DNA from: Lepidodermella squamata
Taxonomy: Eukaryota > Animalia > Gastrotricha
DNA length: 64,000 nucleotides
Direction of reading: 5' to 3'
Assembly: GCA_047495785.1 (NCBI GenBank)
Contig: JBLDXI010000024.1
Coordinates: forward strand, 3,162,001-3,226,000
Below are positions 20,412 to 43,887 of the stretch, in pieces; position 1 is the stretch's first letter, and each line of letters begins with the position of its first letter. A model generated the notes under the pieces. The model searched no databases and had not been told where the DNA came from. It worked only from the letters and a program-made list of their open reading frames with translations. The translations under genes and the position numbers were made by a program.

Positions 20412-20782
20412 TGAACTCTGGCTTGAAAATGCGAATGAACACGTTGATTCTTCTAACAATCTCTGCTGTGATAACTAATTTAGTCTCATATTTCAGTGCC
20501 TGCCAAATATTTTCGAAATAAATCTTTTTCCTGAAGAATTGTTCAATGCACCGAAAATCGATTACCATTTTTTGATGAGCAAATTTATCAAGCCAAAGTG
20601 GCTTGTGCTCGATAGAGTGCACACAGCGTATGTCTTTGTGCCTTTTTTCATACATTATTTATCAAACTTTCCGCAGATTTTATCTTCGCTAAATCGATTG
20701 CTGGTGGTAGAATGAAATCAAGTTTAATGCTTTCATTTACATTCGCAAAAGCAATCGGATTTTTTATTTTCACCATTTCGTG

Positions 20783-23597: not shown

Positions 23598-24376
23598 AAT
23601 TTTGTGACTCAATCGATGGCAGCCGAAATTTAATCAGTGTTATGACGATATACATAGCTGTGATTTCATCAACGCCGTAGGATGGAACATGAATGTAGGA
23701 GTTAATAAAAAACAAAAGATCAAACAAAGGCCTCGAAATAAGCTGATCCAGTTACGTCAATTTCAAGGACGAAGATTTATACCATGAATTCAAGCTGCAA
23801 CTTTTTATCCACTTGTTTTTCGTTATTTCTCAATGGCGGATTCAATGGAGGCGTTCAACTTATTGAGGCAGATAGCAGGTAAGCCCCTATGAATTGAGTT
23901 GAGCCCTGTAGTATCAATAGCGAGAAGTTTCGGCCTCAATGATGCGCCTCACCCAGTTTGCGCGCGGGATTTACTTGCAATTTTGAGACGCGATCATAAA
24001 ATGATAGGCATACAGATAACAACAACTTACCACAGACTGTGTGTGGTAGTAGTAGTATACAACGCGCTTAAATTACGGCAGCCCATCATCGGCACGCAAC
24101 TTGCATATATTCCATGGATTATTTTTTAGCCATCATATTTTTATTTACTATAATACATATCAAAAACAGGAGCTATACTTTCATATAGACCAACTTTTGA
24201 TTATCGCTTTGTGTGTGCGTGCTGAGCGCCGGTATAGCTAGCTAGCCCCCTTGATCATAATCAGCCCAGTGCATAAAAGCAATTGATCGCTTTCACATAA
24301 TAAATTGTTTTTCCGTTGCATTTTTTCGATAATTTCTTTCAATAAAACAATATTATATGAAAGTCTTTACACTATC

Positions 24377-27013: not shown

Positions 27014-27830
27014 GGATGTATTAGAATTATCTACGTCTGTGAAAACTGCCACTATCGTATTAGACTCATCCCTTTCGCACAATGTTGAAACAAAAAAGTC
27101 TTCTGCGCATTTGTTTGTTCGAAATAAAGTTTTTTTGGCATTATATAATACGCTGCTGCTACAAGAATGCGCACAGCAAATATAGCGGGCGTTGTTGTTC
27201 TTTTTACCGCGCTTTGCATTGATGACTTATTATGCAAATGCGCCGGAGTACATATATGAGTATAGTGAGTAGGTAAACAATGACCGAACATGGAGTAGTG
27301 CTACGCATGTGTTTCTATGCTAGATGCAGGTAAGCTTAAGATGTCGGAATGATACATCTCTTTTTTGCAAGATTTTTGTGATCCCCAGCGCGCATTTTTT
27401 CAAGCTAGTTATATAAGGAATGAGACTTGTCACCGCGGTTAACGGCATTAATTGATAGCAAGCGCGAGCATGCATTTAAAAATGTTAAAGATTTTTTTTT
27501 ACGTCGAGTGGCATTGTTTTCTCAAGCCAGCGGCGCCACAATAGCAAAAATAATCCCCGCTACACGCGAGACCGGTCGATGAGAGCCGGCGGAGTTTTTT
27601 ACACGTCCACATAGTAAAAAAACTTTATAGCCAGCGAATTTTAGCAGGTCGCATAACTTGAGCTAAATTATACTCTCTTGAAATATTTATCATTACTTTA
27701 ATTCCCGCGGATTGCGTGCCGACTCTGCGTACCAAAGTTCCGTCACCCAATTATCCTAATGTAAATTTCGAACTTGTTCAGACTCGATGCATTAAACTAT
27801 CATAAGCTTGTTTTTACTTTTACTTCTTCA

Positions 27831-30519
27831 ATGGCTTGTATGAGGCCGCGACAAGACAAGCCTTTATCCGAAATATTTCCACCAGAGTCAGGTAATAAAT
27901 TTTAATCCACCTTAATTATACCAAAATCACTCTTACTTTCAACACTAGACCCTCAATATGACAAAGATGTAGCTGAGATTATTAAGCAGCTAACTCAAGG
28001 GAAAGATGTTCATCTCGTCGAAAAATCTGGGCGGAAAAAGATCCGGAAAATTTATGTTGATGACAAAACTTCAGCGTTAAGAAAAACATCCAAAGGAATC
28101 TTCGCGGGTGGTTCGAAAGAGTTAGTCTGTAAGTTAATTTATTCTCCAAGCTTCTTAAGTTATACCTGTATTTACTACAGCTTTGAGAGAGATCGGGTCC
28201 GTTTTTGGAGGAGCCTACACCGAAGCTTTTGTCAAGTCTGGACTGACCAAAGTAAACCGATGATTAACCGTGAAACTTTGATACAATTTTTGTAATTTAG
28301 GAAGGGAATAAAGCCTTTACAGTTGTCTTTGGGGACTCCAACAACACAACAGTCGATGTCTACTGCGGCGATGAGGCTACAAGAGATGTGTGGCTCAATG
28401 GTCTCTCGATCATTTCATCCCGTTTCAAGCCAAAGATTCAGTCAGCTGATGAGTGAGTTCCGCTTTTGAATCCATTAGTTTACATCGATTTTTTGGCCTT
28501 CTTCCAGTATGGCTCGATGCTACTTTCAGCTCGCAGATGTTAACAACGATGGGCATTTAACAATTGACGAAGTCTGCGCGCTGCTAAAACGCCTCCATTT
28601 GTCCCTGGACAAGCGCTTTGTTAAAGACATGATGGCTAGGGCTGAACAGGGCAGCGATGCCTCAAAGCAGGACGGGAAACTTGACAAGGAGGAATTTCTT
28701 AAATTCGTCAACATCCTATTCCACTGCGAACAGATCGAAGCTTTCTACAACAAAGCTAGAGGAGAGGCGAAATACATGCCATTTGACAAATTCGCTGATT
28801 TTCTAAAAACTCAACAAAGAGAGAACTTTGACAAAGAAAGCGTCCGAGAACTCATTCGTAAGAACGAGCTTAACGTTTGGCTTCGAGGCAATGACATGAT
28901 AGGATACGTCGGCTTCCGGTCTTTTGTTATGTCCGAGGATAACCAAATCAAAGACCTCAAGGCAAATGAGGTTTATCAAGATATGTCCAAGCCGATTACC
29001 GAGTACTGGATTGCTTCTTCGCATAATACATACCTTGTCGGGAATCAACTGACTGGGGAGAGCAGCCTTAATGGTTACATCTCAGCTCTAACGGATGGTT
29101 TCCGATGTGTTGAAAGTAAGTCATTGATTTCGCTTAACAATCTCCGATGAGTCTCTCTTTTCTAGTTGACTGCTGGGATGGGGATAACGGCGAACCAATT
29201 GTTACTCACGGCCACACGTTAACTTCCAAACTCATCTTCAGTGACGTTATTGAGGCTATCAAAACGTCAGGATTTCTTGCCTCTTCCTATCCGGTTATTG
29301 TCTCGATCGAAAACCACTGTTCCGTTGCGCAGCAGAAGAAACTTGCCGAACATATGATTCGCATTTTCGGAAAAGACTTGGTCCCCTCACTTGCCGATCC
29401 AAGCGACCCAACGAAGATGATGTCGCCTGAGCAGCTGAAGAACAAGTACTTGGTTAAGGGAAAGCGGCTCAAGGGGGCTGATAAATTGGCGGGCATGGGG
29501 TCGAGTACGGAATCGACCGGGGATGGTGAAGACGCAGCTGAGAATTCTCAGCTCTCGCCTGAAGAGCGAGAGGCTGTAAAAGCTGCTGAGAAAGCTTCGA
29601 AAACCGCAAAGGAACTTTCAGATATCACTGCAATTCCTTCGACCCACATGCCAGAAATTAACGAAAACGGCGAGCCTCCAAAAGCTTGTAAGTTGGTTTT
29701 CTTTTCTCTCAAAAGTCCATAATTACGAACCTCTATTGTTGTAGTGCCCATGGGTGCTGTATCTTCCTTAACGGAGAACGCTATCCAGTCTTTAGTTGAA
29801 AAGAACCCCGGAGGTGTTGTTGGATATACGAAGAAACACTTCATCCGAACCTATCCGAAGGGTCTGAGGACAGATTCAAGCAACTACGACCCGATGCCTG
29901 GTCTTATTGGCGGTTGCCAGCTGGTTGCGCTCAATACGCAGACGTTTGACAAGCACCTTAATCTTTGCCGCGGATTTTTCGAGGATAACGGCGCCAGTGG
30001 TTATGTTCTAAAAGACTTGCAACTCGCCCCTCAACCACCAGTAACACTCCAAGTTAAAATCATCTCTGGGTATCAACTTGGCAAGGTTGACATTGGCGAG
30101 AATCCAAGAGACGTGTTGGATCCTTACGTGAAAGTGAGGATGTATGGTATTGCTGAAGATTGTGTAAAGTACTCGACGAAAACTATCAACAACAACGGTT
30201 AGAGTCGAATATCAACGTTTTCATTGTTCCATTTTCAATTTTGTAGGGTTTAATCCGGTCTGGAACGAAACATTCACATTCACAGTGAAACGGCCTGACA
30301 TTGCTGTGTTGAGATTCATTGTTATGGACGATGATGCTGGTAAAGATACGTTCATTGCCCAGTATTCTGTAAGATTCGGACTTATTCGACAAGGTATGCT
30401 AGCTACTTAAAAGTTTCTAAAAATGCCACAAAGTTAACCTTTCAGGATTACGGGTCGTCCATTTGGAGAGTGACTTCTCGGACTGCTCTTCGCTTTTGGT
30501 CGAAATAACGAAGAACTAA
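27831..30519 (+). CDS. PLC delta-like, copy 4, 9 exons
   Basis: Starts MACMRPRQDK at 27831. PH exons ~27950-28452 are too short for the ORF track. Catalytic motifs intact. Last exon 30446-30519. Confidence 0.9.
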
Positions 30520-31013: not shown

Positions 31014-33479
31014 ATGTTTTCATCGCGGCTTATTTTCATATTCTTAGCGATATCATCCATGAATCTTGGCTCATATGAAGCTAAGTTGAAAAAACCATAT
31101 AAATTGCGACAGTTGGCTCTATTGTTTCTGATTGGCATGGATCCAAAACTTGTGAAATCTGCCCTAACTGCTGCTTCATTTGTTCTCGATCAAGTCAACA
31201 ACCGAACTGATATTTTGCCTGATTACGAAGTAGAGCTAGACCTGAGGGATGAATATCTCAGCTTCAAATCAGCCCAGCGATTGTTTGAATTCCAACGTGA
31301 TCGAGATAGCTACGGACCAAACGACTATCAATCGCCTTACGTTATCGGGCCTAATCTTTCGACTGGATGCAAAACTCTGGCTCCTGTACTACCCTATGCC
31401 AACATGATAGCCCTTGGAACATACTGCAGCGCCCCATTCCTAGCAGATCACTACTTGCAACCTAACCTCTATCTATCAGTGACCACTGGGAGGACAACAG
31501 CTTTTGCGATGCTTCATTTCATGAGGGAAGTAGGTGGTTGGAATCAGTTCGCAATTTTCGCCCAGTCAACCAATTTTTATGACTACGCCATGGCTCTCTA
31601 TCTCAATGAAAAAGCTGTTCAAAACGGCTTCGAAATCCGTGCTTTCAACACCTTTGTCGATATTGATAGCCAATCGGTCGGCGAGCTCAAGGCCTCTGGG
31701 GCTAGGGTGATAGTTCTGACTTTGATTACCCCACAACTCGTTGCTAGTTTCCTATGCGAAGCCTTCAAATTAGGCATGTCAGGGCCTCGATATGCGTTTC
31801 TGATTTTGAATGCCCAATTTACCCTGACACCGACACCTGGGTCGAACTGCACGGTTCAGCATTTGGTGGCTCAATGGCGGCAGGGTTACCTGTTCGGAAC
31901 TGTTATGAAACCAGTCAATTACAGCGTGGCGACCAGCCTCGGCCCAACAGGTTTGGACTTTGAAAACGCGATGAAGCGCCAGTTGAATGTTACTAACACC
32001 GATGAGATCACAAATACCTACTTCTTCCAAGATTTGATGATGAGAATCGTGCTAGCCCTGAATGAGACAGATGCCAAGTTGAGAGAAAGCTACAACCAAT
32101 CACTACGAGACTATCATCGAAACCCGGAATTGGTCGCGAAAGTTGCAAATCAAACGTTACTCGGGCTCAAGCCGATTGGTGTAAGAATAGGGCGTATGTC
32201 CTATAGTAAGGACGGTAGGGTCGAGGGGGAGATTGAAGCTGTGACAACCTGGTCGCCATTCACCGGCCTCAGAGATGTGGCTTACATTCGGCTTAAGCGA
32301 AACAGCTCTTTGGACGAATTCGACTACAGCAGATATGACCTAGAGAAACAAGCTCCTGTAATATGGATCGCAGGGAAAAGGCCCCTGGATCGTCCAGCTA
32401 TAACCAGGAAGTCACTTGAGATTTCTACTACAGGCCAGGGCTTGACTTGGTTTATCGTCGCATGCACATCGATGTTTCAAGTCATTGGCGTATCTATGAT
32501 CATTTTACGGAAAATGACAGAATCGCCCTTCCGCTCATCTAAAATCCTGGGTTTGATAGGCTGTTTGATTATGAATTGTGCCTCAGCTGTATTCGCTCTT
32601 AATCGATTCCAAGGGGACGAATCGAAGTCTGTCATTTCAAACTTCCTCCTCTGCATCGGCAGTGCATCCGTGATAGGAAGTTTGTCCTTCAGGATTATTG
32701 CACTAAACTCTTACGTCGAAAAGGAAGTTACAGGTCGCAGAAGTTGGCTGCCGACAGTGAGGAGGCAATCAACTATCGCATCATCCCAAATGACAAATGG
32801 AACCCAAGCTTCAGTTAAGAGAGTGTCCAGCATCATCCTTACGCCGAAGAGGTCAAGCTTCGAACGGTCATCAATTAGTTTGGGTCCTTCGTCGACATTA
32901 CTAACCCAGCCTATATTCAACTATCGTCAGATTGATAGGATATCGTTGATTATGACCGGCTGTTTCTCGGTATTAATCGCAATAATTTCCGTTGCTTGGC
33001 TGATAATTCAAGACATGAAGTGTTCGACCGAACTGGTTTCTGAGCCAACGTATAGCGAAGTAACTGATACTTACGACCAAACTTGGTACGTCAAGTGCTC
33101 AGTTAGTGAGGTGAATTCAGCTATCAGCTCTCCATTGCTAGGCGCGATAGTCGGAATCGAAGTACTGGCTCTTTTCGTCGGTCTCCTCCAAGCTTTCAAG
33201 TTGAAACAGATAAAAGCTGTTTCAACGCACTGTCACGAGTTCATACCTACTTGTTTAGGAATTATTGCTGGGGGTACTCTAGTACCTGCGGCGATTTTAA
33301 TATTTCTTACAACCGCTAGTAATGCGCTGAATCAGCAGCTTGCAATTTCTTTGTCGATTGTTGTGATTTCAGCGACGGTATCTATATCGTGGATATATCC
33401 TTCCTTCTTGAAGCCCTTGCCTGATCCGGAAAATCAGGGCATGAGGCGTAGCAGTACTTTGTTGCTCGGTCCTCACTAG
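31014..33479 (+). CDS. Class C (GABA-B-like) GPCR, divergent fourth member
   Basis: 821-aa intronless ORF with signal peptide, VNNRTDILPDYEV, and VFT followed directly by 7TM. Ser/Thr-rich ICL2. ECL2 EPTY..C motif shared with paralogues 1-3. Confidence 0.82.
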   Translation: MFSSRLIFIFLAISSMNLGSYEAKLKKPYKLRQLALLFLIGMDPKLVKSALTAASFVLDQVNNRTDILPDYEVELDLRDEYLSFKSAQRLFEFQRDRDSYGPNDYQSPYVIGPNLSTGCKTLAPVLPYANMIALGTYCSAPFLADHYLQPNLYLSVTTGRTTAFAMLHFMREVGGWNQFAIFAQSTNFYDYAMALYLNEKAVQNGFEIRAFNTFVDIDSQSVGELKASGARVIVLTLITPQLVASFLCEAFKLGMSGPRYAFLILNAQFTLTPTPGSNCTVQHLVAQWRQGYLFGTVMKPVNYSVATSLGPTGLDFENAMKRQLNVTNTDEITNTYFFQDLMMRIVLALNETDAKLRESYNQSLRDYHRNPELVAKVANQTLLGLKPIGVRIGRMSYSKDGRVEGEIEAVTTWSPFTGLRDVAYIRLKRNSSLDEFDYSRYDLEKQAPVIWIAGKRPLDRPAITRKSLEISTTGQGLTWFIVACTSMFQVIGVSMIILRKMTESPFRSSKILGLIGCLIMNCASAVFALNRFQGDESKSVISNFLLCIGSASVIGSLSFRIIALNSYVEKEVTGRRSWLPTVRRQSTIASSQMTNGTQASVKRVSSIILTPKRSSFERSSISLGPSSTLLTQPIFNYRQIDRISLIMTGCFSVLIAIISVAWLIIQDMKCSTELVSEPTYSEVTDTYDQTWYVKCSVSEVNSAISSPLLGAIVGIEVLALFVGLLQAFKLKQIKAVSTHCHEFIPTCLGIIAGGTLVPAAILIFLTTASNALNQQLAISLSIVVISATVSISWIYPSFLKPLPDPENQGMRRSSTLLLGPH

Positions 33480-33551: not shown

Positions 33552-34735
33552 TCAAAAGATAAATAAAATCTGAAGCCGGAGGTATTCCGTCAAACAACGA
33601 GGCAAATTCAAGCTGCTAATTGCCTGCTGTCGCTTTTTCAATCCCATCGGTAAATTGCCCAGAATTACAGAACGAGCTAAGGACTGAAGCTTGATGTTGC
33701 GGAACAAACCACGCTCGAGATAGTTCGAAACTGTCGTCTCGTTAGATCGGACGAAAGCTTCTATCAAAAAATCTATCAGATAATCACTATTTGTCATCGC
33801 TTTGTGCTGCTCGTAAAGAAAAAGCAATCCTCCGTAACTGCCAATATACATCCTAACGCCAGATTGTAGAAGTGGAACGATGAGATCGCGGAAAATTTTT
33901 CTCGCATTACTGTTATCACTCGAATTTCGCGATATCAAGCCCCCGAAGAAAAGGTAAAACAGCCGGTACAATGCCGATGAGCAATCAGTATTTCTACCAT
34001 CGATATCGTCAGTTATCGCTTCAATCAAAGAAATCATTGTTTCATGGCTACTTTTCAGAGCCACCGAAGTGAGAAAGTTGTAGCTGTGACTTGAAGAAAT
34101 TGGCTTGCCTTGCTTTTCTTCAGAATCGCGGGTTCAGCTTGACGTAGAATAATTCGCAGTATTACCTCACTGTCTTCGAGAATCTGAGGATCAGACAGCT
34201 CAAAGTTTTTTACAGCAAGAACTAAAGGGGCATTGTAAGCCATATCCGGCCAGAGTGAATATTCTGGCGATGATAAAAAGAGTTCAACGCCAGTTATGAA
34301 ATGATTCTCAATCGATCTAGCCAGAAAAGTCGCCAAGAGGCATTTCGGCATTGGCAGCTCCGAGAGTTCATCAAACATCTGTTTCAGGAAGGAATCATTC
34401 TTGAGTTCAACGCTTATGGCGAAAAGAGCTACAGCGGCGTATTTTGCGGTATTCGAGTTCAAGGCAGGTATCATTCTCTTGATAACATCGAAAGCTGTCA
34501 CCAAATCTTGCCGCTGAAAATACAGACCGCTAGGTGCTGCTGAGTGGAAAATCAGCGGAATGAGAAGAACGCGTCCCGAGTGGAGTGTTGGGTCAGTCAA
34601 GTTCATGCCACGTTCAGTAAGCTTGAGCCGAACCATTTGAACAAACTGCTGGGAAGAATCATACTCATCGGGTCTATGAAACGGGCATGGCGTTCCGTCA
34701 CAAATAAGGCCATTTAACCGCCATTTACTTTCCAT
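33552..34735 (-). pseudogene. Ankyrin-like/SOCS-box gene copy A, frameshifted
   Basis: ORFs 34055-34777 and 33552-34064 together align to the intact copy at 35596-36786. Near 34092 the intact cta agt reads ca agt, a 1-nt deletion that shifts the frame. Could also be an assembly error. Confidence 0.7.
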
Positions 34736-35247
34736 CTCCTTCGATACTTGAAAACAACTTGAAAAATAACTCTTCAAATAACTATAACAGCTAAGAGATA
34801 GAGGGTGAAATTACATGCGAATATATTATCGTTGCAACTAGTGAGTACAATGCGGAATAGAGATAAGCCCTGTATCGAACTACTCTAAACGCAAAATACA
34901 AGCCTAGGCGGCATCTTTCTGTCGGCACTTTGATGTTCTTTGTAGTGGCGCCTGGGCTTGTATTTCGGAAACTACGGTATAAGTTATAAGAAATGTAATA
35001 TCGCAATGATCAGCAGCAGTGTGCGAAGTTCAGGGGGACAGCTCCTATTACCTATTACATATCATCCTCCTCAGCTCGGCCAGCTATTTTTTCCTCGGGC
35101 AAGAAAATGAAAATTTAGCCAGCTGTTTCACCAAATTTTGAGAGGTTTTAGAGCGTCTTATAGGGGAAAATCTTAAAAATTTCCCTACTTCGCTCGTTTT
35201 TTAAGCCAAAATAACTAGTCATTTAGTCAAATGCAGAACGATTTTCT

Positions 35248-35460
35248 GCTGAATCAGCAACTTGCGATATCTCTGTCGATTGTAGTTATTTCAGCGACGG
35301 TATCCATTTCGTGGAATATCCTTCCTTGTTGAAGCCCTTAACTGATCAGGAAAATCAGGGTATGAGGGGTAGCAGTACGGTTTTGCTCCGTCCTCCCCAG
35401 AGTCATTTTTCGTTGTTAATGACCGGAATTAAAATATCTGGCTACAAACCGGTTTTATTT
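35248..35460 (+). pseudogene. Duplicated, decayed 3' end of the 31014-33479 GPCR gene
   Basis: Alignable with 33326-33550 (gctgaatcagca...gaaaatcaggg.atgagg.gtagcagtac...aaaccggttttattt). It has a 1-nt deletion and the stop TAG has become CAG. Confidence 0.85.
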
Positions 35461-35595
35461 TTCATAAGTTAGCAAAGACACTGAATTCCAGAATTGTACC
35501 TTTCGAAAAGTTTGAAAACGCTCAAACATATAGCCATGGGCACTTCTTTACTAAGAAAAATTAAGAAAATTCGAGCAAATAATTTCATGTAATTT

Positions 35596-36786
35596 CTACA
35601 CGACACTCGGAAGCCGAAGGTATTCCGTCAAACTAAGGGGCAAATTCAAGCTGCTAATTGCCTGCTGTCGCTTTTTCAATCCCATCGGTAAATTGCCCAG
35701 AATTACAGAACGAGCTAAGGACTGAAGCTTGATGTTGCGAAACAAACCGCGCTCCAGATAGTTCGAAGCTATCTTCCCTTTAAATCTGACGAAAGCCTCT
35801 ATCAAAAAATCTATCAGATAATCACTATTTGTCATCGCTTTGTGCTGCTCGTGAAGAAAAAGCAATCCTCCGTATTCGCCAGTTTTCATCCTAATGCCTG
35901 ATTGAAGAAGTGGAACGATAAGATCGCGGAAAATTTTTCTCGCACTTCTGTTATTAATTGATATTTGAGATATCAAGCCTCCGAAGAAAAGGTAAAACAT
36001 CCCGTTCAATGCTGATGAGCAATCGGTATCTCTATCATCGATATCGTCAGTTATCGCTTCAATCAAGTAAATCATTGTTTCATGGCTGCTTTTCAGAGCC
36101 ACTGAAGTGAGATGCATGCCGCGACTTAGAAGAAGTTGACTCGTCTTGCTTTTCTTCAGAATCTCTGGATCAGCTTGGCGTAGAATTATCCGCAGTATTT
36201 CCTCGCTGTATTCGAGAATCTGAGGATCGGAGAACTCAAAATTGTTCACGGCTAGAGCTAGAGGGGTCTTGGAAGCCACATGCGGCATTAAGGAATATTC
36301 TGGCGAAGCTCCGTTGGATAAAAGTAGTTCAACACCAGCTACGAAATGATTCTCGATCGATCTGGCCAGAAAATAGGCCAAGAGGCACTTCGGCATTGGC
36401 AGCTCGAAGAGTTCATCAAACGACTGTTTCAGGAATGTATCGTTCTTGAGTTCAACGCTGATAGTGAATAGCGCTAAAACGGCATATAATGCGGTGTTCG
36501 GGTTGAAGGCAGGTATCATTCGCTTGATAACATCGAAAGCTGGGGCCACATCTTTCCGCTGAAAATACAAACCACTAGGTGCTCCTGGGAAAAGATTCGT
36601 CGGAATAAGAAGGACGTGTCCCGCCTGAAGCGTTGGGTCAATTCTCTGCAGGCCTTGTTCAGCAAGCTTGAGCCTAACCAACGCAGCAAACTGCTGGAAT
36701 GAATCATACTCATCGGGTCTGTGGAGCGGGCAGGGCGTTCCGTCGCAAATAAGGTCGTGGAACAATTTGGTCGATTCACCAGCCAT
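35596..36786 (-). CDS. Ankyrin-like repeat and SOCS-box protein (ASB-like E3 adaptor), copy B
   Basis: C-terminal BC-box-like KLQSLAR and cullin-box-like LNLPLSLTEYL. Ankyrin-like VELLLSNGASP...KTPLALAV. Intronless. Confidence 0.75.
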   Translation of the reverse strand: MAGESTKLFHDLICDGTPCPLHRPDEYDSFQQFAALVRLKLAEQGLQRIDPTLQAGHVLLIPTNLFPGAPSGLYFQRKDVAPAFDVIKRMIPAFNPNTALYAVLALFTISVELKNDTFLKQSFDELFELPMPKCLLAYFLARSIENHFVAGVELLLSNGASPEYSLMPHVASKTPLALAVNNFEFSDPQILEYSEEILRIILRQADPEILKKSKTSQLLLSRGMHLTSVALKSSHETMIYLIEAITDDIDDRDTDCSSALNGMFYLFFGGLISQISINNRSARKIFRDLIVPLLQSGIRMKTGEYGGLLFLHEQHKAMTNSDYLIDFLIEAFVRFKGKIASNYLERGLFRNIKLQSLARSVILGNLPMGLKKRQQAISSLNLPLSLTEYLRLPSVV

Positions 36787-37158
36787 CTCTAGAACAATTA
36801 GAAAAATATCCCTTGCAGCTATAACTCAGCTTGAAGAGCGGGGGAAAAACAGGATAAAAAATTATCATTACAAATGTCGAGCTCATTGCGGAACGCAGAT
36901 AAGCTCTACATTTAAATTCCGCTCCTATATCAAGCGTGTAAATGTGTACCCATTGATGAAAAAGGTTATCAATGATGAGAACTGAATAACTGTCTAACTG
37001 ACTAACATAATCTAAAAAATCGGTTGAATAAATTGTGATCTCCATTGTTCAATCGACCAAAAATGCTCCAATTCCTATTTATTTTACATTAGTACTATCA
37101 GAGCAAGCTGAGGCAGTTTAACACTATACCTTGGAGTCGAATCCAAAATTTTATTAAA

Positions 37159-38436
37159 TCATTGAAAAGAGAGATAATTCGCAAGGCAATTAGGTAGTCG
37201 CAAGCTGGCTATTGCTGTCAGTCGTTGTTTCCGCCCCAGCGGTAATTTCCTTAAAATAGCGGATCTCGCAAGGCTTTGAAGTTTGATTCTACTGAACATA
37301 TCACATTTGAAAGCCCGGGCAGCATATGCATCAGCTTTGAAAATTGCTTCCAAGAGAATGCTACGCAATACTTCATCGTCAGCTAGCTTCTTCTTCTCGA
37401 ATAATTCGATTAACCCACTGAGATTTTGTATTCTAGTTAATCTCAAGCCAGACTGAAGAAGAGGAATAACAACTGTATGGAGCACTTTGCGGGCTTCGTT
37501 ACTTTCTCGGGAGATTGATGACTGCAAGCGGCCGAATGTGAATACGAGCGTGTCATGGAGGAACAAAGAGCCATTAATGTCTGTTTCTTCGATTTCGTAA
37601 GCAATTGCTTCAATTAGAGATACAGCCAAGTCATCGTTGCACTCGTTGATATAAGCGATAATGTCCCAGCCCCGACTTAGCAGGTACTCACTTGTTTTGC
37701 TGTCTTTAAGCTTCGCAGGGTCAGCGTTGTCAAGAATATTTTGTATAACCGCGTTATACTTTTTATGATCTTCAGCAGCTGGGAAAGGTGGGCCGAACTT
37801 CGTCATGGCATTGGCGAGGGGCGAAATATAGACCATATCTGACCACAGTGGGGACTCAACTGAGGCTCCAAAATCGATTAGCAACTGAACTCCGGATGTG
37901 AATCGCAACTCAATGGCCATTGTCAGTAGGTACGAGAGCAGGCAGCTTGGAACGGCTGAATGTTTCCGCAGAAGCTCTTTCAAATATAACTCATTGCGAA
38001 CTTGAACGCTTAGACTCATCAAAATCACCGGAGAGTAATCAACAACGCTCGAGACAGGGAGCATATCTTGAAGCAATGACAGTTGATTTGGTTTCCACTC
38101 TCCGTCGATCGGTTGCACATAAACATTTTTATGCCCTTTCGGATAAAAAAGCGGAGGGATCAGCAATTTGAATTGAAAATCTGCGAGAGCTTCCCTCGTT
38201 GAAACTTCAAGCATAGATAGGCCTAGTTCATTGCTCTTAGTTTGAAGTTGGCGCAAAGTCTCATTCAGACTATCGCGAAGAACACTTGAATTCTCCGGTT
38301 GGTGGAAAGGGCACCCAGATCCGTTGCAAATGAGGCCGATAGTGAAATCAAGTGATTTTTTGAAACACATAAGTTTCCACCTCTGCCTTTCAGAATGTCT
38401 GAACCTCTGAGTTCCACTGAAACGCTCTGCGGCCAT
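37159..38436 (-). CDS. Ankyrin-like repeat and SOCS-box protein, divergent copy C
   Basis: KLQSLARSAIL...LRLPNCLANYL and VQLLIDFGASV...SPLANAM; colinear with copy B. Confidence 0.75.
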   Translation of the reverse strand: MAAERFSGTQRFRHSERQRWKLMCFKKSLDFTIGLICNGSGCPFHQPENSSVLRDSLNETLRQLQTKSNELGLSMLEVSTREALADFQFKLLIPPLFYPKGHKNVYVQPIDGEWKPNQLSLLQDMLPVSSVVDYSPVILMSLSVQVRNELYLKELLRKHSAVPSCLLSYLLTMAIELRFTSGVQLLIDFGASVESPLWSDMVYISPLANAMTKFGPPFPAAEDHKKYNAVIQNILDNADPAKLKDSKTSEYLLSRGWDIIAYINECNDDLAVSLIEAIAYEIEETDINGSLFLHDTLVFTFGRLQSSISRESNEARKVLHTVVIPLLQSGLRLTRIQNLSGLIELFEKKKLADDEVLRSILLEAIFKADAYAARAFKCDMFSRIKLQSLARSAILRKLPLGRKQRLTAIASLRLPNCLANYLSFQ

Positions 38437-39461
38437 GCTCTGGCTGGGCTGAATTGCTAGCTATAGTCATAGCAGAATTCTCAGTGAAGTTAGGAATCAA
38501 GGCGAGCAGATAAACCTTATCTTGCCTTTCCTCTTATTATCTTGTTTCTTATCTGGTGAATATTGTTGTTACGTTCAGAACAAATTTGGGTGGTTTGAAA
38601 AATATTAGTATGCAGCAGTCATGTAGCTCTCAAGATCAACGAAGGAATATGGTGGGAGCGGGACAAACCATGATATAACCCGCATATTTCAAGCCTATCC
38701 AGTGATCCGACTAGGTCTAGCTCTGAGGGGGGTAAATCGAGAATTTCGAGCCCAAAATTTGCAAATCAACAGGGGGACCCTTGCAGAAATTTTCAGAAAT
38801 TTTCAGAAAACTGCACGGTTATTGTGGCCACAAAAATTCTCTGAAATTATTATGAAAATTCATGATTTAAAGGTCAACTCTCTTTTTACCATAATCAAAT
38901 GCAAAAAAATATAAACAATTCGACGGATGATATCGCTTCACGGTTTTAACAGCGACATTCCTGTTATTGAAACTTAACCTGAGATTTTCAGTTTCACGTA
39001 GGCTATGACTTGCTCTGTGTAGGACCGGACGCATCGTGTTTTGCTGCGTGCAATTATCGATTTTGCGCAGCAAATTATGTCTTTCCTGCCGTTGGCAGAG
39101 TCTCTATTTTTTAGCTCAATCATAACTCAGCCCCACACGTAGCTTGCACACGTGAGAATTTCGCCCTATACTTTCATGCGACAACTATTGACATGGGTAT
39201 ATTCCCCTGTGCTGAGGGGCCTTGACGCCACTATTGACACAGCAGCCGTGGTATAGTACTTCCATATATCACTTGTGAGCATACAAAGGCCTGCGTAGTT
39301 TTTTGCTCTAGCGTTAAATAAACATGAAAAGCTGGGTAGTAGTTGTAGTAATGATGATTCGACCAGCCCCATGGTTTTGAGCCTTTTTTCCAGTTCACTA
39401 ACGATGTCGCATTTCTGACCTCTTCTAATTTATTTAATTAGATTTAAGCGCTGCTGGTCAA

Positions 39462-41857
39462 ATGTTACAGGTTAAAGTTGAAGCTTCAACGGCTGAGTGC
39501 CGAGTCTGCAGCAAGGTCCTTGAAGTTACATCAGAACGGCAGCATGATCGCTGGAAGGACGTTTTATGCCCTGCATGCAGTGTGAGTTCTTTGCCCCCTT
39601 ATTATCAAAACAAATTAACATAGCTAATTATTTCTAGAAATTTTATTGGCGATACCATCAAAGTGGACTCTCTCAGACCGATCACTGTAAATGTGTGCCA
39701 GAACTTCCGCCCGACTACAGGGCTTGCAGGCCCTGCCGGCTTCAAAGGTGCAGGGATGTCATCGAAGAATTCTCAAAGGGTAAAATTACGAAATCAACCG
39801 GACGGCCGAGATTGAAGAAGGCAAGGAGGCCTGACAGTGTCCTCTCCCTTTTCGGTATCAACAAAGCTATGCCTCAAATCGCCTGCCGAGTTTGTGGATT
39901 AGCGCCAAGTAAGTGATGAAGATCAATCTTTTAATAAGGAAAGCTTAGGATTTGCGATAATCAAGGACCAAAATTGAAAAGTACGAAAGCTGAGGGATTT
40001 TTGAGAAGCTTCTATTTCATTTCGGGATAATATTTCTATAGCTGCAGTTTACGGGAAAATGGGGTCAAACTACAACATCGATATTCAGAATGAGCGATGA
40101 TGATTTTATGGTGGCCCCATGGATTTAGCGTCACCGATAAAATAATCGATACCGTGTTAGAGTGATTGAGATATATAGTGAATTCCAAAAAGTTGAGTTC
40201 GTGCATTTTGAAGCAGACATCAAAGACTGAATTCGGCTCAAACGCTCAAGTCCTGATTATGTTAGGATTCGACACTATTCCTATTTTCCATGTCTTTAAG
40301 ACGCCTGTTTTAAGAAGACCAAATCAGAAATCTAAGCTTGATGACTCATCAAACACCCTGACCTGAAAAAACACGCGCTTTACGGATAATTTTGGCATCA
40401 AATTACCGTCTTTTCATGCCTAGAGATAAATATGTTGGCAAAATAGCGGAGTTGCTACTGACCAAGTGGACGGGGCATCAAAGCTCGCCATTATTCATCC
40501 TCAATCTAACATATGTATTTAAATCAATTCGAGGAAAAATAGTTAGTCACCGGGTGATTTAGGCTACCTTTGCATATTCTGTAATCTTTCTGTTTTTCCT
40601 CTCAAAGGTACTGGAATTCATTTTGGAGTTGTTACCTGCGAAGGCTGTAAACTCTTCTTCGGCCGTGCAATCAAGAAAACTGGTGAAAAAAAGCTTGTCT
40701 GCAAGCAAGATCCTGCCGCAAACAACGGCGAACTCTGCCCGCCGAAGTCATTATGCCGATCCTGCCGCCTCCAGCGTTGCTACAATGCTGGAATGTCCCC
40801 CGAAAAGACAATCGTCGGCCGCTACAGCAAAGAGCGAGCCGCGCAAATTTTCTCAACGCTATCTGAGCTCAGCCACATGTCAGTGGATGGGCATGAAGCG
40901 AGCAATATGACAATCATTGAAGAAGCGTCAAACATGGCAATAGTTAGCTTCGAGCCTGAACTCATCGAACCCCCTGACGCTTCGGATTCCTTAACCTGGT
41001 CTATTGGTAGACCTCGCAGCGACTCACAATCCATACATTATCGTGATTTTACCGAAGATTACAGTGAAGAAACGAGTAAATGGCTTCTTGAACGAGCTAT
41101 GGCCGCAACAGCTTGTCTATACCCGATTTCTGAGATTAACATTCGAACGATCTATACCGATCCAGAACAGGCAATTCCTGACCTAATTCAATCTCACATG
41201 GAAGCATTTTCCAAATATTTAACGGTGACTAAGGACATGTTTTCTCAATTACCCGGTACAAGCAAGCTGCAAATCGATGACCGCATAAATCTATTCGTCT
41301 GCAGCTTTTTCCCTGTGCTATGGGCTCAGCTATCGCTAACCTTTGACCCTGTGAATCAGCATCCTAATCACATGTCGCTTGATAGAAATAATCATGCCTG
41401 GTTTATGCTGAAAAGTTTGGACCCTCATTTCGTCGATCTTGAAGAAAAACTACGGGACCTTGGCAATGTCTTCTTTGCATCATGCTTGAACATGGAGGAT
41501 TACGCCCTCCTATGTGGCATACTTTGCTTCTCCGCTGCTGAAGTGTACAACCCGCCCGGTCCTAATTGCCCAGCTAGCTTGGTGAAGAATCGCTACGAAC
41601 TCGCCGTGATTCACCATTTCAAAGGAGATGAAGCGAGGCTGGACAAATTCCAGCATCTCGTGGCTAGATTGAACAAGAGTGTCGTCGCTATTGCCGCTTC
41701 GTTTCAAAACAACGCGGGGCGATTTATCAATCTTAACTACTACGCGCTATTTGGGCAGTTTTACAGAGAAATTATGAAAATCATTACTAGGTTAGATTTA
41801 GTTGCGCCTGCTTCTCTTCTTACTGTTGATGCTTGTTTATACAATAAGACTGATTGA
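39462..41857 (+). CDS. Nuclear hormone receptor with two tandem C4 zinc-finger DBDs and an LBD (start uncertain)
   Basis: Exons 39462-39581, 39638-39908, 40608-41857. DBD2 is CRVC..GIHFGVVTCEGCKLFFGR..CRSCRLQRCYNAGM..GRYSK. LBD signatures FSQLPGTSKLQIDDRINLF and EDYALLCGILCFS. Upstream degenerate DBD1 is CRVC..CPACSKFYWR..CRPCRLQRC. Confidence 0.85.
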
Positions 41858-42552: not shown

Positions 42553-43887
42553 TCATTCAATCATTTTCAAACCGTAAGTTAGGAACACAATGAAGCCAAT
42601 TAAAAAAGAAATTATTCCAGTAATAAGATCAAACATTCTGATCATATTGATGCCGCTTTTCGAATCATGCGAGAAAACTCGTCTTTTTGCTATATCATAG
42701 TTAACTAGAAAACAAGCCGTAAGAGTGTAAATCGTCAAAATCACACAAATCACCATGAAAGCTACAACGATGTTGATCAGATAAACTTCTTGCGCAGTTC
42801 TAGGGATCAACGAGAAAATCATTGTCAAAACAACTGCCATGGATAGGTTAACAGTCACGCAAAATGTTGGTCTATCTGGGTGATGGGGGTCCATCAACAA
42901 CCCAACAATTTGTAGGAGAAACAGCGTTGTAGTCGGGACGAATACATTTCCAACATAATACTGGTATTTCCTTTTAAGAGTCAGATTCAAAGACACGTGA
43001 TGAAACCCGCCCGCGTCCCATGAAGATCCGTTGTAGCTGATAAATGTCCAGATATCATCATCTCGCAAGGGCACATACCCGTCTTGAATACCCACGGAAT
43101 CAATGTTGATGACGACTTCGTTCATCAGGTTTTCGTTCTCGATTTCGAACGTGCATGTGGCGTAGTCGAATGGGAACTTGGTGAAGCTGAATCCAAAGCA
43201 GACCGAAGTCATTGGTCGAACGCAATAGATGAGAAAACGAGGACCATCTCGCCGGAATGGCCGAACTTTTATCAGCTTTTCACTGAAAGGTTCAATCCTA
43301 ACTATAATCTTGATATATTAAAGATTCTAACTTACTCTCTTAAGGGTCGTGATTCTCCGATGGCGTTTACATGTTGCATATCTGGCCACCAGACCGAGTC
43401 GGCTGGAATTTCAAACTGAATGCGGTCCAGAATGCTTTGTGGCAAAGTTTCATAGCCAGGGAGCAGATCTGATCTGATATCTCTACCGCACGGCATGATC
43501 CAAAATGTTCGAAATATCATGGAAACGGTCATGCTTTGAAAAAAGATATAGCAAAGCACGAAAAATTGCTTAAAATACTCACCTCATCGCCAAATCATCA
43601 ATATCGTTAATGTAATTAAGAGCGGAGACTAGGTAACTTTTGATTGGGTCGCTGTAATTATTCGTCCTGAGATGCCACTCGGTTGGGAGATTGTTCGATT
43701 TCGCAATCGGGCATAGGTGGAAAAAGCGATCTCGTAAAATGTTGGCGTAGCTTTGATTGATGCTGAAATCTTCGTCGTCTTTGATAATGAACTGTGCAGA
43801 GACATTTCCGATTGTATCACCGAAAGTCATTGCAGGCATTCTCAAGAGCAAAATGAGGGCGAAGTTCAATATAATCATAATTTCCAT
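42553..43887 (-). CDS. Divergent Cys-loop pentameric ligand-gated ion channel subunit, 3 exons, about 410 aa
   Basis: Exons 43887-43583, 43533-43336, 43282-42553. Signal peptide, INDIDD, VWWPDM, Cys-loop CFGFSFTKFPFDYATC, LKRKYQYY pre-M1, four TM helices, short M3-M4 loop. Confidence 0.88.

What the first reader, a model, noticed from the sequence alone, without database searches (positions are those of the whole stretch)
39498..40830. Nuclear receptor with two tandem DBDs, both with non-canonical zinc-finger spacing
Seen: DBD1 (39498-39751) is C-x2-C-x19-CPACSKFYWR...C-x1-C-x10-CRPCRLQRC, followed by TGRPRLKK (AT-hook/T-box-like). DBD2 is C-x2-C-x14-CEGCKLFFGR...C-x11-C-x5-CRSCRLQRC. Both begin CRVC and end CRLQRC, suggesting internal duplication. 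Known: canonical spacing is C-x2-C-x13-C-x2-C and C-x5-C-x9-C-x2-C; described 2DBD-NRs of flatworms and molluscs have a first P-box CEACKK. Here DBD1 has P-box CPACSK, lacking the base-reading Glu, yet keeps all eight Cys. Inference: an independent or highly derived 2DBD receptor in which DBD1 is a structural or protein-binding module or reads a new half-site.
Basis: partly seen in the sequence, partly recalled or inferred. Interest (0 to 1): 0.75.

Follow-up and report, generated by a model that had tools for sequence, protein, structure and literature searches.

The report
Two-DBD nuclear receptor, remodelled first DBD
This is an intact, probably expressed gene for a known but rare hormone-receptor-type gene switch with two DNA-binding modules; its first module is heavily rebuilt, as in a few unnamed relatives, so it is an undescribed variant, not a new kind.

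Summary
Three exons (39462-39581, 39638-39908, 40608-41857) encode an eight-cysteine module (C-x2-C-x19-CPACS|KFYWR...C-K-C-x10-CRPCRLQRC). A basic linker follows, then a true zf-C4 DBD (Pfam 2.3e-13) with odd spacing (x14; C-x11-C-x5-C), then a divergent NR1-like LBD.

DBD1 is not recognised by Pfam or by my own HMM when scanned exon by exon. Three results still tie it to the first DBD of 2DBD-NRs (NR7A):
- Two genes on metagenome contigs (40% identical receptor) have the same module. They share the long first loop, K-F-Y-x-R, C-x-C and CR.CR..RC, and their P-boxes are CEACKK and CEACRK.
- All three genes have a phase-0 intron at the same point, and the canonical Adineta vaga 2DBD-NR has it too (CEACK|KFF).
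- The nearest named relatives are rotifer and acanthocephalan 2DBD-NRs.

So the module is highly derived and probably not an independent duplication, although an AU test could not exclude that. A run that behaves like RNA covers part of exon 2 upstream of Met 39869, but no splice junction was seen. DNA binding by DBD1 is untested.

This scan already noted two-DBD receptors in the same genome on other DNA: a remodelled first DBD (s1-430038, s1-394149) and large arrays (s1-368300, s1-422653).

The joined-exon scan and fold were left out by rule.

The parts
39462..39581 (+). Exon 1: ATG, 12-residue N-terminus, zinc module I of DBD1 (CRVC-x19-CPAC-S; Cys codons from 39498)
   Evidence: Translation. 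An in-frame TAA lies at 39435-39437 upstream. The same layout (ATG, short N-terminus, C-x2-C-x15/19-CEAC-K/R, then GT) is found in L001 2512-2679 and L003 3849-3965. No read support for this exon.
39582..39637 (+). Intron 1, 56 nt, GTGAGT...TAG, phase 0, placed after P-box residue 5
   Evidence: Sequence. Same position and phase in L001 (259 nt), L003 (53 nt) and the canonical A. vaga 2DBD-NR gene L004 (TGCAAA|GTAAAA...TTAG|AAATTTTTC). The next exon starts AAATTTT in all four genes (AAATTTTAT in the window, L001 and L003). The junction was not seen in reads.
39638..39908 (+). Exon 2: recognition-helix remnant KFYWR, zinc module II of DBD1 (C-K-C-x10-CRPCRLQRC, 39686-39751), linker, and the first two Cys of DBD2 (CRVCGLAP, from 39884)
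   Evidence: Translation. The frame is open from the acceptor TAG. X1, which behaves like RNA, has depth in bins 39689-39815 and 39816-39942. Profile-profile match of the CR.CR..RC helix to canonical 2DBD-NRA first DBDs: 94%, P 1e-7.
39797..39832 (+). Basic stretch TGRPRLKKARRP in the inter-DBD linker (AT-hook/GRIP-box/NLS-like)
   Evidence: Translation. Only partly kept in L001 (KSAGSP) and absent in L003, so not a clade feature. Function inferred only.
39869..39871 (+). Internal Met (MPQIACRVC), the alternative start that would skip DBD1
   Evidence: Translation. 77 open codons lie upstream of it in frame, and there is X1 coverage upstream of it.
39909..40607 (+). Intron 2, 699 nt, GTAAGT...AAG, phase 1, inside zinc module I of DBD2
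   Evidence: Needed to join CRVCGLAP-S to TGIHFGVVTCEGC; reading straight on gives TGA. Not shared: DBD2 is uninterrupted in L001 and L003, and A. vaga has introns at other DBD2 positions. No repeat copies in the window. X1 depth is 0 to about 3 here, against about 100-250 on the exon 3 bins X1 covers.
40608..40795 (+). Rest of DBD2: P-box CEGCKL, FFGR, C-x11-C-x5-CRSCRLQRC, ..AGM
   Evidence: Pfam zf-C4 2.3e-13, profile positions 11-69 of 70. Custom HMM 8.6e-12. All five listed allelic differences in 40690-40834 are synonymous.
40811..40828 (+). C-terminal extension of DBD2 with GRIP-box-like IVGRYS
   Evidence: Aligns by eye with AIGRLN (P0001), SMGRLS (P0002), RTGRHS (P0005) and RIGRQS (rotifer 2DBD-NRs). 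Consensus RXGRZP as given in PMC10497141.
41090..41857 (+). Ligand-binding domain (divergent, NR1-like), possible AF-2-like FYREIM near the end, stop at 41855-41857
   Evidence: Pfam Hormone_recep only 0.18; own sequence against PDB gives nothing. A profile of this sequence plus its four nearest relatives hits LXR and Rev-erb LBDs at 5e-7. With eight sequences it reaches 2e-16. 40% identity to P0001 over the LBD. The AF2 model is all-helical but low confidence, pLDDT 47.

Best explanation
The locus is one intact three-exon gene for a divergent member of the two-DBD nuclear receptors (2DBD-NR/NR7, group A lineage of rotifer-like animals). Its product has a short N-terminus, then a remodelled first zinc module pair (DBD1). 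A 44-residue basic linker (last Cys of DBD1 to first Cys of DBD2) follows, then a recognisable but oddly spaced second DBD with a GRIP-box-like extension, a hinge, and a divergent NR1-like ligand-binding domain.

Shown:
- The gene structure is coherent.
- DBD2 is a zf-C4 domain.
- The DBD1 architecture and its intron are conserved in two related genes of another organism.
- The intron sits at the same P-box position as in a canonical rotifer 2DBD-NR.
- Exon 3, and part of exon 2 upstream of the internal Met, appear in an RNA-like run.

Inferred: DBD1 descends from the canonical CEACKK first DBD. Its first loop was lengthened from 13 to 15-19 residues, losing the G-x-H-x-G turn. Its D-box collapsed from five residues to one (C-x-C). 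In this gene only, the base-reading Glu and Lys were replaced (CEACKK to CPACSK).

Likely mechanism, also inferred:
- The protein is a transcription factor anchored on DNA mainly by DBD2, which keeps Glu, Lys and Arg of the recognition helix.
- DBD1 still folds around two zinc ions. All eight Cys, K-F-aromatic-x-R and the Arg residues after C7 and C8 are kept across the clade.
- DBD1 probably adds weaker or differently specified DNA contacts next to the DBD2 site.
- With a one-residue D-box it cannot use the usual D-box dimer interface.
For: - Translations and splice signals.
- Pfam zf-C4 2.3e-13 on exon 3.
- phmmer against 1.84e9 representatives: best hit P0001 at 9e-47 (40% identity), and 55 of the top 150 proteins carry two or more DBD-like matches.
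- The closest named ones identified are Syndermata 2DBD-NRs: A. vaga UJR16012, Didymodactylos, and two acanthocephalans from the window's own hit list. Bc2DBD-NRA1a (CAF0776353) is also in that list; Bc2DBD-NRA5 (CAF0986382) came from the P0001 search.
- L001 and L003 each have an upstream exon with C-x2-C-x19/x15-CEAC(R/K), then GT. A short intron follows, then AG|AAATTTTAT encoding KFYxR...C-x-C...CR.CR..RC, then the linker and DBD2.
- The A. vaga gene has the same phase-0 intron at CEACK|KFF.
- hhalign of remodelled against canonical DBD1 second fingers: 94%, P 1e-7.
- The only two PDB hits of the remodelled-finger profile at E<10 are NR DBDs (VDR 0.66, PPARgamma 2.1), aligned at the second-finger CxxC.
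- The LBD clade profile hits LXR/Rev-erb at 5e-7.
- X1 holds contigs with no differences on exon 3 but has zero depth on the flanks and nearly none on intron 2, which X2 covers at about 100x. X1 therefore behaves as RNA, and it covers bins 39689-39942.
- Of 33 listed differences between the two copies in exon 3, 19 are synonymous and 14 are not.
- The Cys patterns are unique among 1,529 ORF pieces of the window.
Against: - DBD1 is not recognised by Pfam zf-C4 in either exon product, nor in the relatives' pieces, nor in P0005, where the second half is continuous.
- A custom HMM of 41 canonical first DBDs scores the exon 1 and exon 2 ORFs at noise level, E 18 and 33.
- No read or contig crossing either splice junction was found, and X1 shows no depth on exon 1, on the first 50 nt of exon 2, or on 40608-40704.
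- That X1 is RNA is my inference, not on record.
- The tree of short DBD pieces has very long branches, and the AU test does not reject window DBD1 and DBD2 as sisters (p 0.54), nor the clade's DBD1s with their DBD2s (p 0.45).
- AF2 of the exon 2 product is poor: pLDDT 62, with only the CRPCRLQRC..EEF helix confident.
- Zinc and DNA binding are untested.
- C-x-C as a pair of ligands for one zinc in this fold is unproven.
Confidence: 0.72

Rival explanations
1. DBD1 is translated and folded but no longer reads DNA. It is a zinc-stabilised protein-interaction or regulatory module, and the basic GRP stretch acts as a nuclear localisation signal, so the receptor works as a one-DBD receptor with an N-terminal accessory domain.
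For: This gene's P-box has lost both base-contacting residues (Glu to Pro, Lys to Ser). The G-x-H-x-G turn of finger 1 is gone in all three remodelled genes. The D-box is one residue. HMMs of canonical DBDs do not see it.
Against: The relatives keep CEACKK and CEACRK. The whole clade keeps K-F-aromatic-x-R and the Arg residues after C7 and C8, which in solved receptor-DNA complexes lie on the DNA-facing side (from my own knowledge, not tested). The module has kept its place directly N-terminal of DBD2.
Confidence: 0.3
2. DBD1 arose by an independent, lineage-specific duplication of this clade's own DBD. It is not descended from the first DBD of classical 2DBD-NRs.
For: The AU tests do not reject window DBD1+DBD2 as sisters (p 0.54), or the three DBD1s with their DBD2s (p 0.45). 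A. vaga has the P-box intron in both of its DBDs, so the shared intron alone cannot tell the two origins apart. Single-DBD paralogues exist next to the two-DBD genes (L002; L003 1246-2605).
Against: L003 and L001 carry CEACK-KFY and CEACR-KFY. These match the diagnostic first-DBD motif CEACKKFF, not the second-DBD motif CEGCKGFFRR, at three positions. In the free tree the three remodelled DBD1 pieces fall on the DBD1 side (SH-aLRT 93 and 90). The nearest named relatives of DBD2 and the LBD are themselves 2DBD-NRs. The clade's DBD2s lack the P-box intron that a duplicate would have had to copy.
Confidence: 0.12
3. Exons 1 and 2 upstream of Met 39869 are a decaying relic or 5' UTR. The protein starts at MPQIACRVC and has one DBD.
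For: No junction reads were found. X1 shows no depth on exon 1. Codon-usage scores of exons 1 and 2 are only at about the 88th percentile of random window frames. Single-DBD paralogues starting just before DBD2 exist in the metagenome organism.
Against: - 77 open codons lie directly upstream of that Met, beginning exactly at a splice acceptor.
- All eight Cys, the start ATG and canonical GT-AG are intact.
- The same two-exon module is kept in two 40%-identical genes.
- X1 covers sequence in 39689-39815, upstream of the Met.
- X1 also lacks 40608-40704, which must be in the mRNA, so its gaps are not informative.
Confidence: 0.08

Closest known systems
Rotifer 2DBD-NRA (NR7A) receptors, e.g. Brachionus calyciflorus Bc2DBD-NRA5 (CAF0986382 = P0151) and the Adineta vaga 2DBD-NR UJR16012 (P0010); Wu and LoVerde 2023, PMC10497141
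   Same: Order DBD1 - linker - DBD2 - LBD. These are the nearest named relatives by sequence. There is a phase-0 intron after the fifth P-box residue of DBD1 (A. vaga). KF(F/Y)xR follows the P-box, and CR.Q(K/R)C ends both DBDs. A GRIP-box-like GR motif follows DBD2. The LBD is NR1-like. The DBD2 second finger of the P0001 group resembles NRA5 (YKCK..GNGN..C; grouped at SH-aLRT 94).
   Different: Canonical members have C-x2-C-x13-C-x2-C and C-x5-C-x9-C-x2-C in both DBDs, the P-P module CEACKK-CEGCKG (or CEACKG), and 27 residues from the last Cys of DBD1 to the first Cys of DBD2 in the A. vaga protein P0010. This gene has x19 and C-x1-C-x10 in DBD1, x14 and C-x11-C-x5 in DBD2, the P-P module CPACSK-CEGCKL, and a 44-residue inter-Cys linker. 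Pfam sees only one zf-C4 domain.
Unnamed metagenome receptors P0001 (L001) and P0034 (L003), ENA ERZ23486764
   Same: The same remodelled DBD1: a long first loop (x19, x15), the intron after the P-box, KFYxR, C-x-C in place of the D-box, and CR.CR..RC. DBD2 has C-x10-C-x5-C. The LBD is 40% identical.
   Different: They keep Glu and a basic residue in the first P-box (CEACRK, CEACKK). Their DBD2 has canonical x13 spacing, a CEGCKGFFRR helix and no intron. Linker lengths are about 58 and 27. They are not annotated as two-DBD receptors, because the gene caller started their ORFs after the intron.
2DBD-NRB of molluscs, annelids, brachiopods and phoronids (first P-box CLPCKS), and nematode 2DBD-NRC (variable P-boxes)
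   Same: They show that a first DBD without the P-box Glu exists in nature (PMC10497141).
   Different: They are reported with conserved zinc-finger spacing and a five-residue D-box. They have no specific similarity to this gene: the motifs CPACS, CEACRK, KFYWR and CEACKKFY are absent from that paper's five supplement files.
Other nuclear receptor families noted by this scan in the same genome (s1-430038, s1-394149, s1-431974, s1-391734)
   Same: By their summaries: two-DBD receptors with a remodelled first DBD, an extended second finger, and a C-x-H/C-x-C layout in finger 2.
   Different: Those are tandem arrays on other DNA. This gene is solitary in its 64-kb window. I could not compare sequences, and the by-sequence look-up was blank.

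Membership tests
Nuclear receptor superfamily | A zf-C4 DNA-binding domain (Pfam PF00105) above the gathering score | tested here: met
   Exon 3 product: 50.8 bits against a cut-off of 21.1, E 2.3e-13, profile positions 11-69. The missing first nine residues are on exon 2.
Nuclear receptor superfamily | A C-terminal ligand-binding domain of the NR fold (PF00104) | tested here: inconclusive
   Own sequence: 11.7 bits against a cut-off of 23.5, and no PDB hit. The AF2 model is all-helical but pLDDT is 47. A profile of this sequence plus four close relatives hits LXR/Rev-erb LBDs at 5e-7. Homology is therefore likely by transitivity.
2DBD-NR (NR7) | Two tandem NR-type DBDs N-terminal to one LBD | tested here: inconclusive
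   - The position and eight-Cys layout are present.
- The same module occurs in two relatives.
- hhalign to canonical first DBDs gives 94%, P 1e-7, over 20 columns.
- The same intron occurs in A. vaga DBD1.
- However, neither exon product reaches any zf-C4 score.
- The joined DBD1 could not be scanned.
2DBD-NR (NR7) | Nearest sequence relatives are 2DBD-NRs | tested here: met
   The top named hits are rotifer and acanthocephalan 2DBD-NRs, including two in the published nomenclature.
2DBD-NRA (NR7A) | P-P module CEACKK-CEGCKG (CEACKG in rotifer A3/A5) | tested here: not met
   This gene has CPACSK-CEGCKL. The relatives L003 and L001 have CEACKK and CEACRK with CEGCKG.
2DBD-NRA (NR7A) | Conserved zinc-finger modules C-x2-C-x13-C-x2-C and C-x5-C-x9-C-x2-C in both DBDs | tested here: not met
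   DBD1 is x19 and C-x1-C-x10-C-x2-C. DBD2 is x14 and C-x11-C-x5-C-x2-C. The rule is as stated in PMC10497141.
2DBD-NRA (NR7A) | Short conserved inter-DBD region (17-22 residues by the paper's DBD limits) | tested here: not met
   There are 44 residues from the last Cys of DBD1 to the first Cys of DBD2, against 27 in the A. vaga protein P0010 measured the same way.
2DBD-NRA (NR7A) | GRIP-box (RXGRZP-like) in the extension after DBD2 | tested here: inconclusive
   IVGRYS aligns by eye with xxGR(Q/H/L)(S/N/P) of relatives. Only the G-R core matches, and there is no statistical test.

The most novel reading that the evidence does not exclude
The remodelled DBD1 of this small clade (long first loop, C-x-C knuckle instead of a D-box, and in this gene a Pro/Ser P-box plus a GRP-rich basic tail) is a new kind of zinc module. 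It was derived from an NR DBD but has left classical half-site reading. Either it recognises DNA shape or the minor groove beside the DBD2 site, or it docks a partner protein. That would give nuclear receptors a bipartite recognition mode not described so far.
Probability: 0.25. Interest if true: 0.65.

Novelty: new variant of a known kind. Interest (0 to 1): 0.45.

Why it matters
Two-DBD nuclear receptors are a rare and barely studied class. The reference survey (PMC10497141) reports near-invariant zinc-finger spacing and a few fixed P-box pairs. How two DBDs on one chain read DNA has hardly been studied.

This gene and its two metagenome relatives give a graded natural series of first P-boxes, CEACKK to CEACRK to CPACSK, on a shared remodelled scaffold: a one-residue D-box and a 15-19-residue first loop. 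The series is a ready-made test of which parts of an NR DBD are needed for zinc binding, DNA binding and dimerisation.

The case also shows that ORF-based or HMM-based annotation misses this first DBD, so counts of 2DBD-NRs are probably too low.

It is not a new class of protein. The same genome was already flagged by this scan for related arrays, so the added value of this single locus is moderate.

Tried and rejected
- The word-index protein search with the exon 3 product was blank.
- Pfam on exons 1 and 2 and on the relatives' pieces gave no zf-C4 hit.
- phmmer of the exon 2 product against PDB gave only a chance hit.
- A custom HMM of 41 canonical first DBDs against all six-frame ORFs of the window found DBD2 only (the first two attempts failed on my own regex error).
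- Codon-usage scoring of exons 1 and 2 was weakly positive and not decisive.
- A tree and AU tests of the short DBD pieces had long branches and rejected neither origin.
- AF2 of the exon 2 product (pLDDT 62) and of the LBD (pLDDT 47) were too poor for a fold search, so none was run.
- The JGI metagenome scan with the LBD clade profile found no relative.
- A search for paralogues or repeat copies of intron 2 in the window found none.
- Microsynteny with A. vaga was checked, since a Cys-loop channel gene lies downstream of the receptor in both. There was no detectable similarity, so I treat it as coincidence.
- Organism identification with the aldo-keto reductase gave 57-58% identity to unnamed metagenome proteins at best, and no named species above 50%.
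- The bacterial promoter scan is irrelevant for an animal gene.
- The by-sequence look-up in earlier findings was blank.
Full report
**What is there.** The + strand between 39462 and 41857 reads as one three-exon gene.
- Exon 1 (39462-39581) starts at the first ATG after an in-frame TAA (39435-39437). It encodes 12 residues and then CRVC-x19-CPAC-S.
- A 56-nt intron follows (39582-39637, GTGAGT...TAG, phase 0).
- Exon 2 (39638-39908) opens exactly at the acceptor. It encodes KFYWR, 11 residues, C-K-C-x10-CRPCRLQRC and a 44-residue linker with TGRPRLKKARRP. An internal Met lies at 39869, followed by CRVCGLAP.
- A 699-nt intron (39909-40607, GTAAGT...AAG, phase 1) splits a Ser codon.
- Exon 3 (40608-41857) continues with TGIHFGVVT-CEGCKLFFGR...C-x11-C-x5-CRSCRLQRC. 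After that come a GRIP-box-like IVGRYS, a hinge and about 255 residues to the stop.

Among 1,529 six-frame ORF pieces of the window, the finger-1 pattern occurs only in the exon 1 and exon 3 ORFs. The finger-2 pattern occurs only in the exon 2 ORF. The arrangement is therefore not chance.

**What the tools recognise.**
- Pfam sees a zf-C4 domain on exon 3 (2.3e-13) and a sub-threshold Hormone_recep match (0.18). It sees nothing on exons 1 and 2.
- The LBD alone finds no solved structure.
- A profile of this LBD with its four nearest relatives hits LXR and Rev-erb LBDs at 5e-7. With eight sequences it reaches 2e-16.
- A custom HMM of 41 canonical first DBDs of two-DBD receptors finds only DBD2 in the window (8.6e-12). 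It scores the exon 1 and exon 2 ORFs at noise level.

**Relatives.** The word-index search was blank. The exhaustive phmmer search found 1,006 proteins at E<=0.001.
- The best are P0001 (621 aa, 9e-47, 40% identity, mostly over the LBD) and P0002 (2e-28).
- Of the top 150, 55 carry two or more DBD-like matches.
- The named ones are Adineta vaga UJR16012, Didymodactylos carnosus, Brachionus calyciflorus, and the acanthocephalans Pomphorhynchus and Neoechinorhynchus.
- P0151 is CAF0986382, which is Bc2DBD-NRA5. P0032 is CAF0776353, which is Bc2DBD-NRA1a. Both names follow the published nomenclature.
- The receptor therefore belongs to the 2DBD-NR lineage of rotifer-like animals (Syndermata).
- I could not name the organism. 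An aldo-keto reductase from the window is at best 57-58% identical to unnamed metagenome proteins. Earlier notes of this scan call the genome 'probably a rotifer'.

**The key comparative result.** P0001 and P0034 come from metagenome contigs whose genes were called as plain ORFs. Both ORFs begin inside a DBD1-like second finger..VQCKC-x12-CRFCRFQQC and ..EKCSC-x7-CRICRMNRC.

The DNA upstream explains why:
- In L001, an ORF from 2512 encodes M..CQVC-x19-CEAC-R, followed at 2680 by GTATGT. At 2939, after ..TTTAG, the reading frame of P0001 opens with AAATTTTATTGC (KFYC).
- In L003, an ORF from 3849 encodes M..CKGC-x15-CEAC-K, followed by GTAAGT. After a 53-nt intron the frame opens with AAATTTTATACT (KFYT).

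Three genes in at least two organisms thus share these features:
- a short N-terminus;
- a lengthened first loop that has lost the G-x-H-x-G turn;
- a phase-0 intron after the fifth P-box residue;
- K-F-Y-x-R;
- C-x-C where the five-residue D-box should be;
- CR.CR..RC.

The first P-boxes form a series: CEACKK (the canonical 2DBD-NRA box), CEACRK, and CPACSK in the window. The alignments are A1-A3. A fourth protein, P0005, has CEACKK, C-A-C and CRWCRFRRC.

**The intron.** In the canonical A. vaga gene (L004) the first DBD is split at TGCAAA|GTAAAA...TTAATTAG|AAATTTTTC. That is CEACK|KFF, the same position and phase.
- Intron 1 of the window is therefore an old nuclear-receptor intron. This supports both the splice model and the NR ancestry of DBD1.
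- A. vaga also has the equivalent intron in its DBD2 (CEGCK|GFF), so the intron alone does not say which DBD was the ancestor.
- The Brachionus NRA5 gene is intronless.
- Intron 2 of the window is not shared with anything I looked at, and it goes with one extra residue in finger 1 of DBD2 (x14).

**Statistical links of DBD1 to NR DBDs.**
- hhalign of the four remodelled second fingers against twelve canonical first-DBD second fingers gives 94% probability, P 1e-7. The match covers only the 20 columns around CR.CR.Q.C.
- The remodelled-finger profile finds just two PDB chains at E<10. Both are NR DBDs, aligned at the second-finger CxxC, but the E-values are not significant (0.66 and 2.1).
- In a quick tree the window's DBD1 piece groups with those of L001 and L003 (SH-aLRT 93), on the first-DBD side.
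- The window's DBD2 falls within the group of 2DBD-NR second DBDs, most of them syndermatan (SH-aLRT 90).
- Branches are very long. AU tests do not reject the window's DBD1 and DBD2 as sisters (p 0.54), nor the clade's DBD1s with their DBD2s (p 0.45).
- Descent from the canonical first DBD therefore rests on the P-box series, KF(Y/F)xR, position and relatives. It does not rest on the tree.

**Expression and constraint.** Only contig-level data were available.
- X2 covers the whole stretch at about 100x, as DNA does.
- X1 holds contigs identical to the window on exon 3 (records with zero differences). It has zero depth on both flanks, 0 to about 3 on intron 2, and zero on the 3' flank from 41848.
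- DNA of the same genotype could not give that pattern, so I read X1 as RNA. This is my inference; the record does not say so.
- X1 has depth in bins 39689-39815 and 39816-39942, upstream of Met 39869 and over part of DBD1's second finger.
- X1 has none on exon 1. It also has none on 40608-40704, which must be in any functional mRNA, so its gaps are uninformative.
- No junction-spanning contig was reported.
- Both runs hold a second, divergent copy. Of 33 listed differences in exon 3, 19 are synonymous and 14 are not, and all five in 40690-40834 (DBD2 and just after it) are synonymous.
- No differences were listed for exons 1-2 (90 rows were not shown).

**How it most likely works.**
- Shown: the domain order and the conserved residues.
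- Inferred: the protein is a ligand-domain-bearing transcription factor. Its DBD2 keeps Glu, Lys and the last Arg of the recognition helix (CEGCKLFFGR) and a GRIP-box-like tail, so it should provide the main sequence-specific anchor.
- DBD1 keeps all eight Cys, so two zinc sites are plausible. It also keeps the Lys, the aromatic pair and the Arg of the helix, and the Arg residues after C7 and C8.
- From my own knowledge of receptor-DNA complexes, these positions face DNA. DBD1 probably still lies on DNA beside DBD2.
- In this gene the two classical base-reading residues are Pro and Ser. DBD1's contribution is therefore either weak and non-specific or directed to a different sequence.
- The one-residue D-box excludes the usual D-box dimer contact.
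- TGRPRLKKARRP could be a minor-groove tail or a nuclear localisation signal. It is not conserved in the relatives.

**Comparison with the literature.** Wu and LoVerde 2023 (PMC10497141) list 2DBD-NRs in many phyla, including five rotifer subgroups.
- They report P-P modules CEACKK-CEGCKG/CEACKG (group A), CLPCKS-CEGCKK (group B) and variable ones in nematodes.
- They state that both DBDs keep the canonical spacing 'with very little exception', that most have a C-X5-C D-box, and that most group A and B members have 17-22 residues between the DBDs.
- The motifs CPACS, CEACRK, KFYWR and CEACKKFY do not occur in that paper's supplement files.
- Only that paper treats rotifer 2DBD-NRs in the searched library.

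The remodelled first DBD is therefore an undescribed variant of a known class.

This scan has already noted the same theme in this genome on other DNA: s1-430038, s1-394149, s1-368300, s1-422653, s1-431974 and s1-391734. I could not compare those sequences. In this window the gene is solitary.

**Left out by rule.** The exon 1+2(+3) product has no reference, so the joined zf-C4 scan and the fold of the whole DBD1 were not run.

**Verdict.** The gene is a highly derived member of the 2DBD-NR lineage. An independent invention is unlikely. I rate it a new variant of a known kind, of moderate interest.

Noticed in passing
L003 1246-2605 and L002 423-1898: In the metagenome organism, single-DBD paralogues of the same clade start just before DBD2 with the linker motif R(I/L)DFSK(L/I)PC. 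One of them (L003 1246-2605) lies in tandem directly upstream of the two-DBD gene P0034. L002 shows no DBD1-like ORF in its 422 nt of upstream sequence. This fits loss of DBD1 in some copies, the 'one-grip offshoot' of note s1-431974.
   Followed up: partly
window 39909-40607: Intron 2 (699 nt) sits at a DBD2 position not shared with L001, L003 (both uninterrupted there) or A. vaga (introns after GIHFG and after CEGCK), and it goes with one extra residue in finger 1. X1 has a few contigs of depth 1.6-3 with opposite-strand joints at 40223/40336 and 40304/40407. The repeat finder sees no long inverted repeat there. The origin is unexplained.
   Followed up: partly
window 40690-41835: Both public runs hold two versions of exon 3 at similar depth, differing by about 6-8% in places (for example 18 differences in 220-293 nt around 41543-41835). 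These are either divergent haplotypes or duplicated copies of the gene.
   Followed up: partly
window 42553-43212 (- strand) and L004 3381-4211 (- strand): A Cys-loop ligand-gated channel gene lies tail-to-tail just downstream of the receptor, both here and next to the A. vaga 2DBD-NR. tblastn found no similarity between the two channel pieces, so this is probably coincidence.
   Followed up: yes
window 33552-38436 (- strand): Several paralogous ORFs (33552-34064, 34055-34777, 35596-36786, 37159-38436) share an N-terminal ..(G)LICDG(T/S)(P/G)CPFH(R/Q)P(D/E).. motif and a C-terminal ..LQSLARS.IL..LP.G.K.R....SL.LP..L..YL.. end. From memory this end looks like a SOCS box. The family was not identified here.
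   Followed up: no
window 18497-30202 (+ strand): Four tandem copies of a phospholipase C-like gene (EF-hand-like start, X and Y box-like ORFs, C2-like end), each split by short introns. Class-C GPCR-like ORFs lie at 84-1010 (a piece running off the window start), 2453-4984, 6396-8867 and, more divergent, 31014-33479. Seen only in the ORF list.
   Followed up: no
L001, L003 (ENA ERZ23486764): Prokaryote-style gene calling on these eukaryotic metagenome contigs starts the receptor ORFs right after the DBD1 intron. The deposited proteins therefore hide the first zinc module, so two-DBD receptors of this type will be undercounted in protein databases.
   Followed up: yes
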